Made by a program: the position numbers and the translations under genes. A stretch of 63,937 nt of DNA, counting the filler, from Octopus bimaculoides (lineage: Eukaryota): the NCBI RefSeq assembly GCF_001194135.2. It is 4 parts of 4 records of this genome, joined end to end, with 100 filler letters (N's around TTAATTAATTAA, not from the genome) between each part and the next. Parts side by side here need not be neighbours in the genome. Positions count along the whole stretch, not along the records: positions 27,373 to 57,665 come from NC_069009.1; 3 more parts are not named here. The stretch is one strand, 5' to 3'. Of this stretch, positions 29,248 to 56,675 are shown one piece after another; the stretch's first letter is position 1, and every line of letters starts with the position of its first letter. Under the pieces are notes generated by a model, which was not told the origin of the DNA, did not search any database, and was given only the letters and a program-made list of their open reading frames with translations.

Positions 29248-29319
29248 AGATATGTTAAACTGGGAAGACCATTGAAGTTTCCTTCTTGAATTTTCTTGAT
29301 TTTATTTTCTGTCAAATCT
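29248..29319 (-). CDS. LRR exon G (last seen): DLTENKIKKIQEGNFNGLPSLTYL
   Basis: 72 nt, aattttatgttacag acceptor, CT|gtaagt donor, open. Confidence 0.9.
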
Positions 29320-30081
29320 CTGTAACATAAAATTTTATCTAAGATATTATCACCCAAATTTCTAACACAAAATATGAGACGATCGGAAAATGGACAGAAC
29401 TGTTTTTTACGACAAAATGCAAAATATTATAGCTAAACAATTACTTGACGGAGAAGGAAAGTAGATGTGGATGATATTTAGGAGGATGGTGATGGATGTG
29501 GCGGTTGAGGCGGTATAGTTAAATATGAAGAAGAGGATGAAGACAGGAGGATGGTGATGGTGTTGATGAAGATAATGCTACTGATGACGGTGAGGAAGTT
29601 TGTGATAACGATGAGGATGGGGACAGTTAGCATGATGATGATGATTTTGATGACGCCAGTGTAACTGGTGCAATTTCTGTTCACGATGATAATGGATATG
29701 TTGATGACGATAACGATAAGGGTGTTGAAAAAGAAGACGAAAAAGACGTAGAAAGGGAAGAGGCGTTGGAGTAGAAGTAGAAAGAAGGAAGAGAGAGAGG
29801 AAAAGACACAAGATGAAGAACAACAAGCAAATGTTTAATTTCAGGTAAGAACGTGAACGCAAAAATTACAAGCGGATCAAATGGGATGAGATCTACAGGG
29901 ACCTCAAAAGTAAAATGGATGATTAGCAAATGAAGAATACGATGATTATAATGAGGCAGAAGTAAAAAGCTAGAAGACTTAAAAGAAATGAAGGAAAATG
30001 AAATAAGTGAAAGTAAAAAAATAAAAGACGAACAATGAAGAATAGAAAAAGGCAGAAAAAAAAGAAAAAGTAGTAGTAGTG

Positions 30082-30115
<34 letters not shown>

Positions 30116-31040
30116 CAGTAGAAAAAGTGATTCAAGAACAATGGAATGACGGTTATAATGTTATAATGTGTATGTTTGAAAGTAGTATACGAGGCGATGA
30201 AGAAGACGTGGAATAATAAAAAAACAAGAAACATGGGATGAACCATAAACTTATGCGGATTAATTAAAAGGAAATAGATTAAAATATGAGAAATAATAAA
30301 GAAATGATAAAGACGACGATGAAGAGATCGCTGATGCTGAAGATGTAAATGGATAGGAGAGTACAGAGAAGTGGGAATGAAGGATGAGAAAGGGAGGAGA
30401 GAAAGGATAAAAGAACTAATGATAAAGAAAAAGTATATGTATGAGCTCCCCATTGAACTGTGGGTTAACGTCATTGTTGGCAGTTCCGGCCTATAATTGA
30501 GACACCGTTGAAGAGTTACAGACAGAACACAGTTAAAGAGTATTCTAATACACTCACAAACATGAGACAGGGCCGTGTACTCATATACACTGATAATCTC
30601 ACATAGACGAAATCATACACTCATACTCACAATCACTCATATTCACTCATACTCACTTTGACACAGAATCAATATCACAACTGACAGAATCATTCACAAC
30701 TTTGCGATCAGCGGCTAAATTCCCTCTCACCGCATGTAAACACTAATTGTAGCAGCACTAGTAGTAGAAATGGTAGTGGTAAAGGAAGACGTGCTGGAGT
30801 GAGTACGAGGATGAAGCACGATTGGGTGGAACACAAATTGCCATACAGGCCACCGCGTATTCAGAGTCACACAGAGACACACATATTTACAGACACTTAG
30901 GAACTTTCAGCCATTTCTATCCGAAGAAAGTGTAAATCTAGGGAGGCATAAGGACGTGGTGCTAAATATGATGGGAAGTTATTAAGGATTAAGTTATATA
31001 TTGTCAATGGAATATTATCATCAAGACTTAGACAACTTAC

Positions 31041-31112
31041 AGTTTTTTTAAGCTGGGCAGGTCATGGAAGGCTTTTACTTCAATGTTTGTGATATTGTTT
31101 TTTTCCAAATAT
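31041..31112 (-). CDS. LRR exon E: YLEKNNITNIEVKAFHDLPSLKKL
   Basis: 72 nt, ctaaattttatttcacag acceptor, CT|gtaagt donor, open. Confidence 0.92.
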
Positions 31113-32711
31113 CTGTGAAATAAAATTTAGTTAATAGGAGAAAATTAGAAGAGTTGCATAACATAGAATATTATGGCGAAACAAATACTTGGTGGAAGAT
31201 AAAGAAAGTAGATGATAGTGATGATAATAGGATGGAAGATGAGGTGAAGTGGGAAGAGGAGGATGGAAGCGGTGATGGTTGTAGTGATGAAAATGGTGAT
31301 GAGGCAAAGTACAGGTGGATGATGGTTGGATTGACGAAGATAATGTTGCCGTTGTTGATGATGGTGATGGTGATGTTTGTGATGATGATATTGATGAGAA
31401 TACTTTCGTTTATGCTGACGGTGATTTTGATGATGATCGTGGCGCTGGAGATATTTTTGGTGAAGATGATGACGGATAGACCGATTACTATTATTCTGAT
31501 GATGGAAATGTTTGTGAGGTTGATAATACTGATGATGTTGACGATCATTAGGATATGACGGATCATGAAGAAATCAAAAATATAGAAGATTGGTAGAAAA
31601 TTGAGTGAAATTTGTGACAACGGAATGAATAAAGAGAAAAAGAGCTCCAAGAAAATGTTCAAGGGAGTCTGACAACTAAAAGAAGAGGAGGAAAACATTG
31701 AAAGGACGAGGGGGCTGGAGTACGAGAACAAGAAGAAGATAAATACAACAACACCAAAAGACAGAATAGAGGTAAAAGGAATAGTGGGAGGGAGTCGAAT
31801 GGGTAGAATATTAAGGTGAGAAATGGGAAAATAAAGAACACAAAACAGAAAAAGCAAAAGGATTAAAAAAGGAGATGGAGGTGGAGAAGAATAGGAAGAA
31901 AATAAAAAAGAAGAAATGGTGAAAATGATGTTGGTCATAATTATGAGGATGATAATGATAATAATAATGATATTGATGATGGTGATGATGATGATGACGG
32001 TGACGGTGACGACAAAGTAGGTAATGTCCTTTATTTTGACCATTACGATGAAGCTAATGATGACGAAAATGAAGAAGATGATTTCGATATTGTTGCAAAA
32101 ATAAATGAACGGAAATACTTAGAAGAAGAAAAGAATGAATGGATGAGGGATAAAATGCAAGACACGCAGTTTATATATGATGATGTCAACGGTGAGAGAG
32201 AAGTCTGAAAAACGTCAAAGGCTTACTTGTATTTGTAATAGTAGTAGTAGTAGGAGGAAGAGGAGGACGAGGAGGAGGAGGTCGAGGAGGAGGACGAGGA
32301 GGAGAACGAGGAGGAGGACGAGGAGGAGGAGAATGAGGGGAGTAGTGGCAGCAGCAGTAGTAGTAGTAGTTGTAGTAGTAGTAGTAGTAGTAGGAGGAGG
32401 AGGAGGAGGAGGAGGGGGTAGTGGCAGCAGCAGTAGTAGTAGTAGCAGCAGCAGCAGCAGCAGTAGTGGTAGTAGTAGTAGTAGTAGTAATGGTTGTAGT
32501 AGTAGTAGTATTGGTAGTAGTGAAGGAAGAAGAAGCGGAGTGAATAAGAAGAACAAAGCAGAGGGCAGTGTAATGCAAAATGGAGTGACAAGAACGCAAA
32601 ATAGATTGACAAGGGAATGACAAGGACGTAGTGCAAAAAGAATGTAAAGATGTTAAACGCTTATTAATATATTGTCAATGAAATGTTATCAACAATACTT
32701 ATCCAACTTAC

Positions 32712-54114: not shown

Positions 54115-54186
54115 AGGGCTGTTAAGTTGGACAAATGCTGAAAGGTTCCTACGTCGATTTCCGTGATATTATTTTTCCAGAAATTC
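54115..54186 (-). CDS. LRR exon A1: NFWKNNITEIDVGTFQHLSNLTAL
   Basis: 72 nt, tttttcttccag acceptor, CT|gtaagt donor, phase 2-2, open. Confidence 0.9.
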
Positions 54187-55495
54187 CTGGAAGAAAAACA
54201 GATTTGTGACAGAATGTTATATATATTTTGGTGATGTAAAAAATGGTAACTAAATTATGATCATGACGAACTTGATGATGTGATAATGTTCGAGTGATGT
54301 TATATAAATGATGATGAGGCAGAGAAAATATATGGCAGTAGTGTTAATGAGGAAGAGACTATGATGAGGGTAAAGATAAAGATTAAGTAGGTAAAGAAGA
54401 ACCAGATGAATAAGAATAATGGGATGAGGAAGAGGTGTGAAGACGAGATAAGGAAGAATAAAGAAGAAGAGAAAAAAGAAAATTTTGACTGAGAGGACGA
54501 GAAGAACGCTGTTAGTGGTAATAGTGATGATAATTGTGATGATAATGATGATGATGAAGATGATGGCATAGTTTGTTTTAATGATATTGATGATGGTAAT
54601 TATGGTGATGAAGATGATTTAGCTGATGAGATTAATGGAAGTGTCATAGATTGTGGAGAAGATGATGATGACGATGAGATCAATAACGATACTGTTCATT
54701 GTGATGACTAAGGACGGCGATAATGAAGGTGATTTTCATAAGAATAACCGTGAAAGAAGCAAAAGAATAAAGATGACAATAAGAAGAAGAAGAAAAAGAA
54801 GAAGAAGAAGATGAAGAAGAGAATAAATGAAAAGGAAAATAAGTAGAAAAAAGAGAAGTGGAAGACAGAAAGGAGAAAAGGAGACGAAGGAGAATATGAA
54901 AAACTAGAGGACTAGGAGGAGGGGTAGGAGTGGAAGTAGAATGAAAATTGAAGAAGAAAAGAAGGTAAAGTAGTAGTAGTAGTAGTAGTAGAAAAAGAAG
55001 AACAAGGAGAAGGAGGAGGAGGAGAAGAAGAAGAAGAGGAAGAAGAAGAAGAAGAAAAAGAAGAAGAAGAAGAAGAAGAAGAAGAAGAAGAAGAAGAAGA
55101 AGAAGAAGAAGAAGAAGAAGAAAAAGAACAAGGAGAAGGAGGATAAGTAGAAAAAAGAGAAGTGGAAGACAGAAAGGAGAAAAGGAGACGAAGAAGAATA
55201 TTNNNNNNNNNNNNNNNNNNNNNNNNNNNNNNNNNNNNNNNNNNNNNNAGGTAAAGTAGTAGTAGTAGTAGTAGTAGAAGAAGAAGAAGAAGAAGAAGAA
55301 GAAGAAGAAGAAGAAGAAGAAGAAGAAGAAGAAGAAGAAAGAAGAGAATAAATGAAAAGGAAAATAAGTAGAAAAAAGAGAAGTGGAAGACAGAAAGGAG
55401 AAAAGGAGACGAAGAAGAATATTAAAAAATAGAGGATCAGGAGGAGGGGTAGGAGTGAAAGTAGAATGAAAATTGAAAAAGAAGAAAAGAAGGTA

Positions 55496-55546
<51 letters not shown>

Positions 55547-56603
55547 AAGAAGAAGAAAAAGAAGAAGAAGAAGAAGAAGAAAAAGAAGAAGAAGAAGAAC
55601 AAGGAGAAGGAGGAGGAGGAGGAGGAGGAGAAGAAGAAGAAGAAGACGAAGAAGAAGAAGAAGAAGAAGAACAACAAGAAGAAGAAGAAGAAGAAGAAGA
55701 AGAAAATAGAAGAAGAAGAACAACAACAACAGCAGCAAGAACAAAAATAAGATGAGGGAGGAAAGGAATCTCTTTAGTTGAAGAAATAGATGGGAATAAG
55801 AATAGGAAGGATTGAAGAGACGAACAAAACTTTTATGATGAAGAAGATGAAGACATCAAAAATTGAGAAATAGAGGTAAAAGGATTCGACGGTGAAGGGG
55901 AAATGGAGGACGAGAAAGAGAATAGACAAAAGATGAAAGAGGGAATAAAATAAATTTATATTATATATTAAGTTAGAGTCAGCCGTGGTTTATAACTGAG
56001 ACACAGTTATAAACATATGTGTATATTATCATATACTCACACATACGTGCAAGAGAGTGACTTATATAGGCGCATACACAACTAGACTTATATAGGCGCA
56101 AACAAACTTACACACACGCATCCACATACTCTCACATTCTCTCATACTTTCTCATACAATCGTTTTAAGAAGTGACAGAATCGTCCACAGCTTTGTTATC
56201 AGTGATCGAATTCCCTCTTGTGACATGTATCCAGCAAATGCAGTAGGAGATCTATAGGTAAAAACAACAAATGATATAGAAAAAGATATACACTCGTATG
56301 CATTTAGTTATACTGAAAGGCAGATTTATATATGCACATACATAGACGAAATTATATACATTAATTTTCAGAAACTCATACATAAACCCAGACAGTGATA
56401 TTCACACACAAATACACAGAAATATACACACTCACCTTCACAGACATTCACGAAGACTTTGCATATTCCTATGGAAAGCGACAGATAATATATAGTGTGC
56501 CAAGGAGAGTGAGAGAATGAGAGAAAAAAGAAAGCATGGAAAGACACGAAATATTTAAATGTAATTTTCTTTAAAACAAAAACAAAAGACTAATCCAACT
56601 TAC

Positions 56604-56675
56604 AGTTCCATTAAACTGGGAAGATTTTGAAACGTTCCAACTTCTATTTCATTGATATCATTCTTTTGGAAATAT
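56604..56675 (-). CDS. LRR gene exon 1 of 13 seen (type F): YFQKNDINEIEVGTFQNLPSLMEL
   Basis: 72 nt, acceptor ttttgttacag, donor CT|gtaagt, phase 2-2, open frame, fits LxxLxLxxNxIxxIxxxxFxxL. Confidence 0.9.

What the first reader, a model, noticed from the sequence alone, without database searches (positions are those of the whole stretch)
29248..56675. Hidden minus-strand LRR gene built from 13 interchangeable 72-nt cassette exons: candidate combinatorial receptor
Seen: 13 exons, all exactly 72 nt, all phase 2-2 (CT|A or CT|G always rebuilds Leu), all stop-free with canonical splice sites. The ORF track catches only a few, by chance. Established: one-LRR-per-exon phase-2 architecture occurs in extracellular LRR genes such as LGR/glycoprotein-hormone-type receptors, and variable LRR arrays act as recognition molecules in lamprey VLRs. 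Inference: any subset can be skipped in frame (upper bound 2^13 = 8192 combinations), so the locus could yield a repertoire of LRR solenoids for immunity or chemosensation. Symmetric exons alone do not prove alternative splicing.
Basis: partly seen in the sequence, partly recalled or inferred. Interest (0 to 1): 0.82.

Follow-up and report, generated by a model that had tools for sequence, protein, structure and literature searches.

The report
Octopus LRR gene with one-repeat exons
The window holds the middle of an unannotated octopus gene whose leucine-rich-repeat binding domain is encoded one repeat per 72-base exon, a known layout for such genes, and nothing here shows that the exons are mixed and matched to make a receptor repertoire.

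Summary
There are 12, not 13, minus-strand exons of exactly 72 nt. Each has an AG acceptor and a GTAAGT donor, sits in phase 2, and encodes one 24-residue LRR. All assembly gaps lie in introns, at least 381 nt from any exon, next to microsatellites. The joined 287 aa score LRR_8 at E 7.6e-81 and fold as an unbroken solenoid with pLDDT 96.9.

A block of 4-5 exons, including a dead exon relic, was duplicated in tandem. Scaffold residues have stayed under purifying selection since then.

The closest relatives (45-48% identity, with shared intron-flank DNA) are an octopus family with the same exon layout. Annotated members continue into LRRCT, an HRM-like domain, GPS and a 7TM, matching the published octopus-specific adhesion-GPCR expansion.

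The piece ends before either gene end, so the C-terminal module is inferred. Symmetric 72-nt phase-2 LRR exons and occasional in-frame skipping are already described in LGRs, Slit, NLRP3 and brown-algal ROCOs. Paralogue gene models include 22 of 23 intact exons. A combinatorial repertoire is untested and unlikely. This is a new member of a known kind, of modest interest.

The parts
56604..56675 (-). LRR exon 1 of those present (YFQKNDINEIEVGTFQNLPSLME); 72 nt, phase 2
   Evidence: ttacag|A...CT|gtaagt; nhmmer E 1.5e-28
54115..54186 (-). LRR exon 2, type A1 (NFWKNNITEIDVGTFQHLSNLTA)
   Evidence: nhmmer E 6.5e-31; 85% nt identity to exon 7
52039..52110 (-). LRR exon 3, type A2 (NLWGNKIKEINVGSFQNLSSLRT)
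   Evidence: 93% nt identity to exon 8
50252..50323 (-). LRR exon 4, type B (YLSSNDIKEIKSNTFRNLSSLTE)
   Evidence: 85% nt identity to exon 9 and 86% to exon 5
48270..48341 (-). LRR exon 5, type B' (GLSSNDIKEIKADTFGNLSSLTD)
46936..47007 (-). LRR exon 6, type C (ELQHNNIGNIEERAFHDLTSLRN)
   Evidence: 93% nt identity to exon 10
45173..45244 (-). LRR exon 7, type A1 (NFWENNITEIKVGTFQHLSSLTT)
41283..41354 (-). LRR exon 8, type A2 (NLWDNKIKEIKVGTFQNLSSLTT)
   Evidence: nhmmer E 2e-34
34033..34104 (-). LRR exon 9, type B (YLSENDIKEIKTYTFRNMSSLKD)
32712..32783 (-). LRR exon 10, type C (VLQNNNIGNIEERAFDDLPSLKN)
31041..31112 (-). LRR exon 11 (YLEKNNITNIEVKAFHDLPSLKK)
   Evidence: 79-81% nt identity to the C-type exons
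29248..29319 (-). LRR exon 12 (DLTENKIKKIQEGNFNGLPSLTY). It ends in CT, so another coding exon must follow beyond the piece or in gap 28370-28818
   Evidence: its best matches are the LRR next to last in P0272 and P0273
53470..53499 (-). Relic of a dead LRR exon (3' end ...CCAGTTTAACGAGTCT plus a gtaaat donor), lying between the A1 and A2 exons of block 1
   Evidence: region 52903-53498 is 76% identical to 43638-44228
44171..44230 (-). The same relic in block 2, abutted on its upstream side by a SINE-like repeat
46936..54186 (-). Duplicated block, copy 1: A1, relic, A2, B, B', C
   Evidence: self-BLAST at 68-88% identity including introns; exon identity matrix
32712..45244 (-). Duplicated block, copy 2: A1, relic, A2, B, C, enlarged by transposon insertions in two introns
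   Evidence: between copies dN 0.10, dS 0.23, and 0 indels in exons against 33 in 1200 nt of flanks

Best explanation
The region is the central part of the ectodomain-coding portion of a conventional split gene in an octopod genome.

Shown:
- Twelve 72-nt phase-2 exons each encode one 24-residue 'typical' LRR (LxxLxLxxNxIxxIxxxxFxxLxx).
- Spliced in genomic order they give an uninterrupted, cysteine-free LRR solenoid rich in N-glycosylation sequons.
- The array grew by tandem duplication of single exons (B and B') and of a 4-5-exon block.
- Since that duplication, the scaffold residues and the exon length have been kept by purifying selection, while predicted concave-face residues changed almost freely.
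- The closest relatives are an octopus-lineage family of tandemly clustered genes with the same one-LRR-per-exon layout.

Inferred:
- The gene continues beyond both edges of the piece. Upstream there should be a signal-peptide plus LRRNT exon. Downstream there should be a last LRR, an LRRCT, a Cys-rich module and an HRM-like module.
- Most probably (about 50-60%) it ends in a GAIN/GPS plus class-B 7TM, which would make it a member of the published octopus-specific LRR-bearing adhesion-GPCR expansion. Otherwise it is a secreted or anchored LRR paralogue.
- The LRR horseshoe is the ligand- or adhesion-binding surface.
- By default all exons are spliced in. The symmetric exon design mainly explains how repeat number changes over evolutionary time through exon duplication and loss. 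It does not imply a somatic repertoire.
For: Exons and splice sites. Not chance.

LRR identity: LRR_8 at E 7.6e-81. PDB sequence hits are IGFALS (E 1e-57), LGR4 (E 5e-54) and LRRC15 (E 1.6e-53). The AF2 model has pLDDT 96.9 and pTM 0.93, with a beta strand every 24 residues. The best geometric match is LRIG1, TM 0.96, rmsd 1.1 A. There are 9 N-x-S/T sequons and 0 Cys.

Duplication and relics.

Selection: dN/dS is 0.44 overall. Scaffold positions have dN 0.015 against dS 0.28. Concave positions have dN 0.275 against dS 0.30. There are no indels in 288 nt of exon against 33 in 1200 nt of flanks.

Family: the best protein hits are octopus P0272, P0271 and P0001 at 45-48% identity, against 41.5% or less for every other protein in the local comparison. 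The O. sinensis locus L001 shows 70-75% nucleotide identity that extends into intron flanks. The same 72-nt phase-2 exons occur in L001, L002 and L003, with tandem arrays in O. bimaculoides chromosome CM046629.1.

C-terminal modules of family members:
- P0274 (LRR through HRM-like) is 97% identical over 108 aa to P0331, which carries GPS at E 8.6e-14.
- P0310 has LRRNT, LRR and 7tm_2.
- A 1088-aa O. sinensis model has LRR_8, GPS and 7tm_2 together.

Literature: Ritschard et al. 2019 describe an octopus-specific adhesion-GPCR expansion with LRRs in 5 of 22 members, expressed in axial nerve cord, suckers and skin (PMC6408891).
Against: - Neither end of the gene is in the piece. No LRRNT, LRRCT, HRM, GPS or 7TM was found here, so the receptor class is inferred from paralogues that are only 45-48% identical.
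- Repeat-by-repeat matching to family members is not collinear.
- In O. bimaculoides L003, no GAIN or 7TM part was found within 82 kb around P0272, so some family members may lack a 7TM.
- No annotated product or transcript for these exons was found, so expression is unproven.
- dN/dS of 0.44 rests on only 92 codons.
- Constitutive splicing is inferred from signal strength and from automated paralogue models, not from RNA of this gene.
Confidence: 0.6

Rival explanations
1. One reading: the 12 symmetric exons are cassette exons that are skipped in many combinations, giving a large somatic repertoire of LRR solenoids for immunity or chemosensation.
For: All junctions are interchangeable: every exon ends in CT and starts with A or G, so every junction gives Leu. 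Removing an exon removes exactly one solenoid turn. Variation between repeats is concentrated on the predicted binding face. One intact, in-frame LRR exon (L002 9628-9699) is left out of the NCBI model of a paralogue, and paralogues carry 'isoform X1' and 'isoform X4' labels. Precedents exist for LRR-exon skipping: LGR5 delta-5, NLRP3 delta-5, crab VLR2 and algal ROCOs. Long CU-rich tracts lie in many introns on the sense strand.
Against: There is no transcript evidence at all. All 12 exons have uniformly strong canonical sites, unlike typical weak-site cassette exons. Paralogue models include 22 of 23 intact exons in order. The same symmetric layout is the ordinary one for LGR, Slit and NLR genes, which are not repertoire generators. 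The 2^n figure is arithmetic, not observation.
Confidence: 0.08
2. The array is a decaying or silent duplicate, that is, a pseudogene fragment of the octopus LRR family, which would explain why no annotated product matches it.
For: No protein above 57% identity was found in three word-indexed searches and one exhaustive search. Two dead exon relics and large transposon insertions lie in the introns. Non-scaffold positions have dN/dS of 0.5-0.9.
Against: All 12 exons keep the exact length, an open frame and both splice sites, despite 7-26% divergence between duplicates and 33 indels in 1200 nt of adjacent intron. Scaffold positions have dN 0.015 against dS 0.28. Annotation of this family is visibly fragmentary: the P0272 model starts inside an intron. 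Tiny exons spread over gap-ridden scaffolds are easily missed.
Confidence: 0.12
3. It is the ectodomain of an LGR-type (class A) glycoprotein-hormone or relaxin-like receptor, the classic gene family with 72-nt phase-2 LRR exons.
For: The exon size and phase match. LGR4 and LGR5 ectodomains are strong hits both by sequence in the PDB (E 5e-54) and by fold.
Against: Identity to LGR4/5 is only 25-31% in the fold alignments, similar to many other LRR proteins. The closest relatives by protein and by intron DNA are the octopus LRR / adhesion-GPCR-like family. The piece contains no hinge region or 7tm_1.
Confidence: 0.05
4. The repeated exons are an assembly artefact, for example haplotypes or collapsed repeats scaffolded in tandem across gaps.
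For: There are nine gaps in 30 kb, and the region is full of repeats.
Against: The duplicated blocks differ by 7-26% in exons and 17-32% in flanks. They carry different transposon insertions and a different number of B exons. That is far beyond allelic divergence. Gap-free O. sinensis contigs L001 and L002 show the same architecture.
Confidence: 0.02

Closest known systems
Octopus-specific adhesion-GPCR expansion with N-terminal LRRs (group 3 of Ritschard et al. 2019, PMC6408891). Annotated relatives are P0272 ('toll-like receptor 5', O. bimaculoides), P0001 ('LRRC15-like'), P0274 ('slit homolog 1-like') and P0020 (all three O. sinensis), and P0310 and P0331 ('adhesion GPCR G6-like', O. vulgaris).
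   Same: These are the highest protein identities found (45-48%). They have the same 24-residue repeat flavour (..N.IKEIK..TFQNLSSLT.L) and the same 72-nt phase-2 exon per LRR. Intron-flank nucleotide similarity is 70-75%. They show tandem clustering and internal exon duplication.
   Different: The window has no annotated product. Its N-terminal cap, C-terminal cap, HRM-like domain, GAIN/GPS and 7TM are outside the piece, so membership is inferred. Its repeat order is not collinear with any one member.
LGR4/5/6 and the gonadotropin/TSH receptors
   Same: Each LRR is encoded by a roughly 72-nt exon with phase-2 introns (citing Koo 1991). The ectodomain is a horseshoe. In-frame loss of single LRR exons is documented, for example LGR5 delta-5.
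   Different: These are class A 7TM receptors with a hinge region. Identity is only 25-31% in the fold alignments. They are not the nearest relatives, and no LGR-specific part is present.
Brown-algal ROCO (LRR-ROC-COR) genes with shuffled LRR exons
   Same: The exon design is identical: 72 bp, phase 2, one LRR per exon. There is strong exon duplication and shuffling, variable residues on the binding face, and alternative splicing proposed as a way to diversify candidate immune receptors (PMC11378527).
   Different: These are cytosolic GTPase-linked proteins from an unrelated lineage, with no extracellular caps. The similarity is convergent or reflects general LRR exon logic, not homology of the genes.
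Slit genes and NLR genes (exonic modularity of LRRs)
   Same: There is strict exon-per-repeat modularity, which permits in-frame skipping. This was noted for Slit (Little et al. 2002, cited in PMC6642158) and demonstrated for NLRP3 exon 5.
   Different: Slit has four capped LRR domains plus EGF and LamG domains. NLRs have 171-nt exons of the RI-type LRR and are cytosolic.
Lamprey and hagfish VLRs, and the crab 'VLR2' isoforms
   Same: An LRR solenoid whose repeat number varies. Crab VLR2 isoforms arise by alternative splicing (PMC10045472).
   Different: Agnathan VLRs are assembled somatically by gene-conversion-like copying from donor cassettes (established knowledge). Here all units are ordinary exons with AG/GT sites, collinear on one strand.
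LRIG1, LRRTM2 and LINGO-1 ectodomains (structural neighbours)
   Same: The solenoid geometry is nearly identical: LRIG1 chain 4u7l_A gives TM 0.96 and rmsd 1.1 A over 287 columns.
   Different: Identity is 28-36%. These proteins pair the LRRs with Ig domains and a single TM. There is no evidence of orthology.

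Membership tests
Typical 24-residue extracellular-type LRR domain (Pfam LRR_8 / LRR clan) | Tandem repeats matching LxxLxLxxNxIxxIxxxxFxxLxx with a 24-residue period | tested here: met
   LRR_8 at E 7.6e-81 with 6 stretches. L1, N9, I11, I14 and F19 are invariant in 12 of 12 repeats.
Typical 24-residue extracellular-type LRR domain (Pfam LRR_8 / LRR clan) | Curved solenoid fold with one beta strand per repeat | tested here: met
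   AF2 pLDDT 96.9 and pTM 0.93, with strands at residues 23-25, 47-49 and so on to 263-265. Foldseek matches to LRIG1, LGR4/5 and LRRTM2.
Typical 24-residue extracellular-type LRR domain (Pfam LRR_8 / LRR clan) | Cysteine-rich N- and C-terminal caps (LRRNT, LRRCT) | tested here: inconclusive
   tblastn with family caps finds nothing in the piece, and the 287 aa contain no Cys. Only about 1 kb lies upstream and 1.9 kb (with a 449-nt gap) downstream of the array, whereas paralogue introns reach 8 kb.
Octopus LRR-bearing adhesion-GPCR expansion (Ritschard group 3) | Closest sequence relatives are members of the family | tested here: met
   P0272, P0271 and P0001 are 45-48% identical over 251-307 aligned positions. 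Every other protein in the local comparison is 41.5% identical or less, apart from one unnamed 1573-aa protein (P0188, 47.5%). Links from P0274 to P0331 (GPS) and P0310 (7tm_2) come.
Octopus LRR-bearing adhesion-GPCR expansion (Ritschard group 3) | Shared gene structure and nucleotide-level homology, including intron flanks | tested here: met
   70-75% nucleotide identity to O. sinensis L001 across exons and flanks. Identical 72-nt phase-2 LRR exons in L001, L002 and L003.
Octopus LRR-bearing adhesion-GPCR expansion (Ritschard group 3) | GAIN/GPS autoproteolysis domain and class-B 7TM (7tm_2) in the same gene | not testable with these tools
   The piece ends 1.9 kb after the last LRR exon. The source contig could not be retrieved.
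LGR / glycoprotein-hormone receptor family | About 72-nt phase-2 exons, one per LRR | tested here: met
   The feature is described for gonadotropin receptors in PMC11378527. It is shared with other families, so it is not diagnostic.
LGR / glycoprotein-hormone receptor family | LGRs are the nearest homologues | tested here: not met
   LGR4/5 are 25-31% identical in fold alignments, and their PDB sequence E-values are no better than those of IGFALS or LRRC15. The octopus non-LGR family is at 45-48%.
LGR / glycoprotein-hormone receptor family | Hinge region and rhodopsin-type 7TM | not testable with these tools
   These would lie outside the piece.
Agnathan VLR-type somatically assembled receptors | Donor LRR cassettes without splice signals, in either orientation, flanking an incomplete germline gene | tested here: not met
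   All 12 units have a pyrimidine tract plus AG and a GTAAGT donor. All are on one strand, in order and in one phase.
Dscam- or protocadherin-like combinatorial exon arrays | Transcripts that each contain a chosen subset of the arrayed exons | not testable with these tools
   No RNA data are accessible. Indirectly, paralogue gene models include 13/13, 4/4 and 5/6 intact exons together.
Modular LRR genes with documented in-frame exon skipping (LGR5 delta-5, NLRP3 delta-5, Slit, algal ROCO) | Symmetric exons: length divisible by 3 and the same phase on both sides | tested here: met
   Each exon is 72 nt, phase 2 on both sides, and every junction rebuilds Leu.
Modular LRR genes with documented in-frame exon skipping (LGR5 delta-5, NLRP3 delta-5, Slit, algal ROCO) | Observed isoforms lacking one or more LRR exons | not testable with these tools
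   The only lead is a paralogue: the intact exon L002 9628-9699 is omitted from model P0274.

The most novel reading that the evidence does not exclude
The octopus-specific LRR / adhesion-GPCR-like gene clusters, including this unannotated member, might use regulated skipping of their symmetric 72-nt LRR exons. That would give neurons or sucker and skin sensory cells different ectodomain lengths and binding faces. It would be a splicing-based surface-diversity system running alongside the expanded octopus protocadherins. The evidence does not exclude this. The junctions are fully interchangeable, binding-face residues evolve almost neutrally, one intact exon is skipped in a paralogue model, and long CU-rich intronic tracts are present.
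Probability: 0.07. Interest if true: 0.75.

Novelty: new member of a known kind. Interest (0 to 1): 0.3.

Why it matters
If the assignment holds, the window adds an unannotated, recently expanded LRR ectodomain to an octopus-specific receptor family. That family has been linked to the arm nerve cord, suckers and skin (PMC6408891). The result also suggests that current gene models for the family systematically miss or fragment the tiny, widely spaced LRR exons. That would matter for counts of LRR-bearing adhesion GPCRs and for evolutionary-rate analyses in cephalopods. The block duplication with an embedded dead exon is a clear small example of how LRR number evolves by exon duplication. The larger idea, a splicing-generated receptor repertoire, would be important but is not supported by anything found here.

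Tried and rejected
- Thirteenth exon. A relaxed motif scan in six frames and an nhmmer profile over the whole piece found only 12 exons plus two relics.
- LRRNT and LRRCT caps, or family N- and C-terminal parts, within the piece. tblastn found nothing.
- An annotated product. Three homologous-protein searches were run. That tool seems to list only proteins up to about 1.75 times the query length (maxima 502, 807 and 1503 aa), so a tripled query was used to reach long proteins. The best identity stayed at 45-48%, apart from 57% over 35% of the query for P0020. A protein longer than about 500 aa that carries only a few of these exons could have been missed.
- The exhaustive representative search was swamped by giant LRR proteins and gave no close relative.
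- Recovering the source contig through window ORFs failed.
- Testing whether exons 10-12 are collinear with the last LRRs of family members. Repeat-by-repeat matching is ambiguous, so I dropped that argument.
- tRNA and Rfam scans of the piece returned nothing.
- Pfam scans of intronic ORFs gave only weak RVT_1 and UvrD_C_2 hits.
- Haplotype or assembly duplication was rejected on divergence.

Full report
**What is in the sequence.** The piece (27373-57665) is AT-rich (36% GC), rich in microsatellites, and interrupted by nine N runs. On the minus strand I find twelve exons of exactly 72 nt: 56675-56604, 54186-54115, 52110-52039, 50323-50252, 48341-48270, 47007-46936, 45244-45173, 41354-41283, 34104-34033, 32783-32712, 31112-31041 and 29319-29248. 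Each follows a pyrimidine tract ending in CAG or TAG, and each is followed by GTAAGT. Each begins with A or G and ends with CT. Every intron is therefore phase 2, and every possible exon-exon junction rebuilds a Leu codon.

**Count.** A six-frame motif scan and an nhmmer profile built from the exons find only 12, each at E 1e-26 to 2e-34, plus two short relics. The joined product is 864 nt, giving 287 complete codons.

**Chance.** The pattern is far beyond chance. There are 12 LRR-motif AG-72-GT windows on the minus strand, none on the plus strand, and none in 200 Markov simulations.

**Gaps.** The scan's program asked that these be tested first. All gaps lie inside introns, 381-3448 nt from the nearest exon, and all are bordered by TA, GAA, GTA or ATAG microsatellites. 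No exon or frame spans a gap, and each exon's frame is fixed by its own splice sites. Exon order across gaps is corroborated by the internal duplication described below, since both copies have the same order. Continuity cannot be proven, and a further exon could hide in a gap of 113 nt or more.

**What the exons encode.** Each exon encodes one 24-residue 'typical' LRR. L1, N9, I11, I14 and F19 are invariant in all 12 repeats. The joined protein scores LRR_8 at E 7.6e-81. Its sequence hits among solved structures are IGFALS, LGR4, LRRC15, TLR3/13 and LRIG1. AlphaFold2 predicts one continuous solenoid (pLDDT 96.9, pTM 0.93) with a beta strand every 24 residues, each strand straddling an exon junction. 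The best geometric match is the LRIG1 ectodomain, at TM 0.96 and rmsd 1.1 A. The protein has nine N-x-S/T sequons and no cysteine, consistent with the uncapped middle of an extracellular LRR domain. No LRRNT, LRRCT or any other domain lies in the piece. The last exon ends in CT, so coding sequence must continue. The gene is cut at both edges of the piece.

**How the array arose.**
- The exons fall into types: A1 (NFW.NNITEI), A2 (NLW.NKIKEI), B (YLS.NDIKEIK) and C (.LQ.NNIGNIEERAF).
- The series A1-A2-B-(B')-C occurs twice, at 54186..46936 and at 45244..32712. Exon identity between copies is 85-93%, and flanking introns are 68-88% identical.
- In both copies, a relic of a dead exon (the last 17 nt plus a degenerate donor) lies between A1 and A2. 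That exon therefore died before the block was duplicated.
- The second copy is swollen by transposon remnants.
- Divergence between copies is far above allelic levels, which excludes a haplotype or assembly artefact.

**Selection since the duplication.** Between the two blocks dN is 0.10 and dS is 0.23, giving a ratio of 0.44. Scaffold positions have dN 0.015 against dS 0.28. Predicted concave-face positions (x2, x3, x5, x7, x8) have dN 0.275 against dS 0.30. There is no indel in 288 nt of exon, against 33 in 1200 nt of adjacent intron. The exons have therefore been maintained as coding sequence while the binding face diverged freely. The sample is small (92 codons).

**Relatives.**
- No protein above 57% identity exists among the sequences that three word-indexed searches could list. 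That tool appears to show only proteins up to about 1.75 times the query length, so a tripled query was used to reach long proteins. The exhaustive representative search also found none. On the evidence available the gene is unannotated.
- The nearest proteins (45-48% identity) are all from octopus: P0272 ('toll-like receptor 5', O. bimaculoides), P0271 and P0001 ('LRRC15-like', O. sinensis). P0020 is 57% identical over a third of the query.
- The O. sinensis contig carrying P0020 (L001) is 70-75% identical to the window at nucleotide level, and the similarity extends into intron flanks.
- L001, L002 (the P0274 gene) and L003 (the P0272 locus on O. bimaculoides chromosome CM046629.1) all show the same 72-nt phase-2 exon per LRR. 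L003 contains several such arrays in tandem.
- Family members run in this order: signal peptide, LRRNT, LRRs, LRRCT, a Cys-rich module, a domain of about 100 aa, and an HRM-like domain (E 4.5e-4, below Pfam's cut-off).
- P0274 is 97% identical over 108 aa to O. vulgaris P0331, which carries a GPS motif (E 8.6e-14). P0310 combines LRRNT, LRR and 7tm_2. A 1088-aa O. sinensis model combines LRR_8, GPS and 7tm_2.
- This matches the octopus-specific adhesion-GPCR expansion of Ritschard et al. 2019, in which 5 of 22 members have LRRs and expression is seen in axial nerve cord, suckers and skin (PMC6408891).
- The window's array most likely belongs to this family. Whether this particular gene ends in a 7TM is inferred, not shown. 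In L003 no GAIN or 7TM part was found within 82 kb, so LRR-only paralogues may exist.

**The combinatorial-receptor idea.** The formal premise is correct: any subset of exons can be dropped in frame. But this symmetric design is the ordinary one for LRR genes.
- Gonadotropin and LGR receptors have phase-2 exons of about 72 nt.
- Slit and NLR genes show strict exon-per-repeat modularity (PMC6642158).
- Brown-algal ROCO genes have exactly 72-bp phase-2 LRR exons, with shuffling and proposed splicing diversity (PMC11378527).
- Individual skipping events are documented: LGR5 delta-5 (PMC3203099), NLRP3 delta-5 and crab VLR2 (PMC10045472).

In this window all 12 exons carry uniformly strong signals. 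The gene models of three paralogues include 13/13, 4/4 and 5/6 intact LRR exons in genomic order. The one omitted exon (L002 9628-9699) has intact sites and is only a lead. The VLR analogy fails mechanistically, because these are spliced exons and not donor cassettes. No RNA evidence was accessible, so the repertoire reading is untested. I put it at about 0.08 as stated, and at about 0.07 for the broader family-wide version.

**Verdict.** The best explanation is the central ectodomain exons of a conventional, selectively maintained member of the octopus LRR / adhesion-GPCR-like family, expanded by tandem exon-block duplication and presumably spliced constitutively. Overall confidence is 0.6. 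Within that, I give about 0.5-0.6 that the gene ends in GAIN plus 7TM. This is a new member of a known kind, with interest 0.3.

Noticed in passing
window 43634-43778, 45571-45945, 48885-49157, 51073-51645, 52727-53059, 54781-55198, 55276-55720: Long (AAG)n tracts of 145-573 nt on the plus strand, which read as (CUU)n on the gene's sense strand, sit in most introns of the upstream half. The whole piece is strand-skewed (A 11004 against T 7244, G 6695 against C 3717). Whether these CU-rich tracts affect splicing is unknown.
   Followed up: partly
window 35082-35465 and 44233-44625: A SINE-like repeat of about 375 nt is present twice. The two copies are 92% identical to each other and 85-92% identical to several copies in O. 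sinensis L002 and one in O. bimaculoides L003. ARAGORN and Rfam find no tRNA in it. One copy directly abuts the dead exon relic at 44230.
   Followed up: partly
window 28819-29007 and 27627-27827: Two further dispersed repeats: 28819-29007 has at least seven partly overlapping matches and 27627-27827 at least seven matches among the listed hits in O. sinensis L002 (90-95% and 78-80% identity). They lie just downstream of the last LRR exon.
   Followed up: no
window 41615-43436 (+), in the intron between exons 7 and 8: Fragmented ORFs with a weak reverse-transcriptase hit (RVT_1, E 0.0029), antisense to the gene. About 75% nucleotide identity to L001 24449-25572. Probably a LINE remnant.
   Followed up: partly
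window 35545-37462 (-), in the 7.2-kb intron between exons 8 and 9: Broken ORFs with a weak UvrD-like helicase C-terminal hit (E 0.0073). Possibly a Helitron or Pif1-like remnant. This intron also holds two of the gaps.
   Followed up: partly
all 12 donors in the window; L001 34971-34974: Because the introns are phase 2 and the donors are CT|GTAAGT, an unspliced exon reads CTG TAA, which is Leu followed by a stop. The O. sinensis model P0020 ('isoform X1', 157 aa) ends in exactly this way at L001 34974. It may therefore be a read-through or truncated model.
   Followed up: partly
L003 (O. bimaculoides CM046629.1, 10.40-10.48 Mb): The model P0272 is named 'toll-like receptor 5' but has no TIR domain. 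Its first ~31 residues are translated intron sequence upstream of an LRR exon. LRR exons of the upstream 805-aa model run to within 2.6 kb of P0272's first LRR exon, across a gap, and another LRR array starts about 1.7 kb after its end. Annotation of this family looks fragmented.
   Followed up: partly
L002 9628-9699 (O. sinensis VCDQ01005240.1): An intact 72-nt LRR exon with good acceptor and donor sites, ending in AT so that the junction would give Ile or Met. It is not included in the NCBI model P0274. It is either a skipped cassette exon or an annotation omission.
   Followed up: partly
window 46431-46558: A 27-nt tandem repeat (4.8 copies, 98% matches) lies directly beside gap 46243-46430, at the boundary between the two duplicated blocks.
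   Followed up: no
tool behaviour: the search for homologous proteins listed no protein longer than about 1.75 times the query (maxima 502, 807 and 1503 aa for queries of 287, 461 and 863 aa). Long multi-domain relatives are invisible to short queries.
   Followed up: yes
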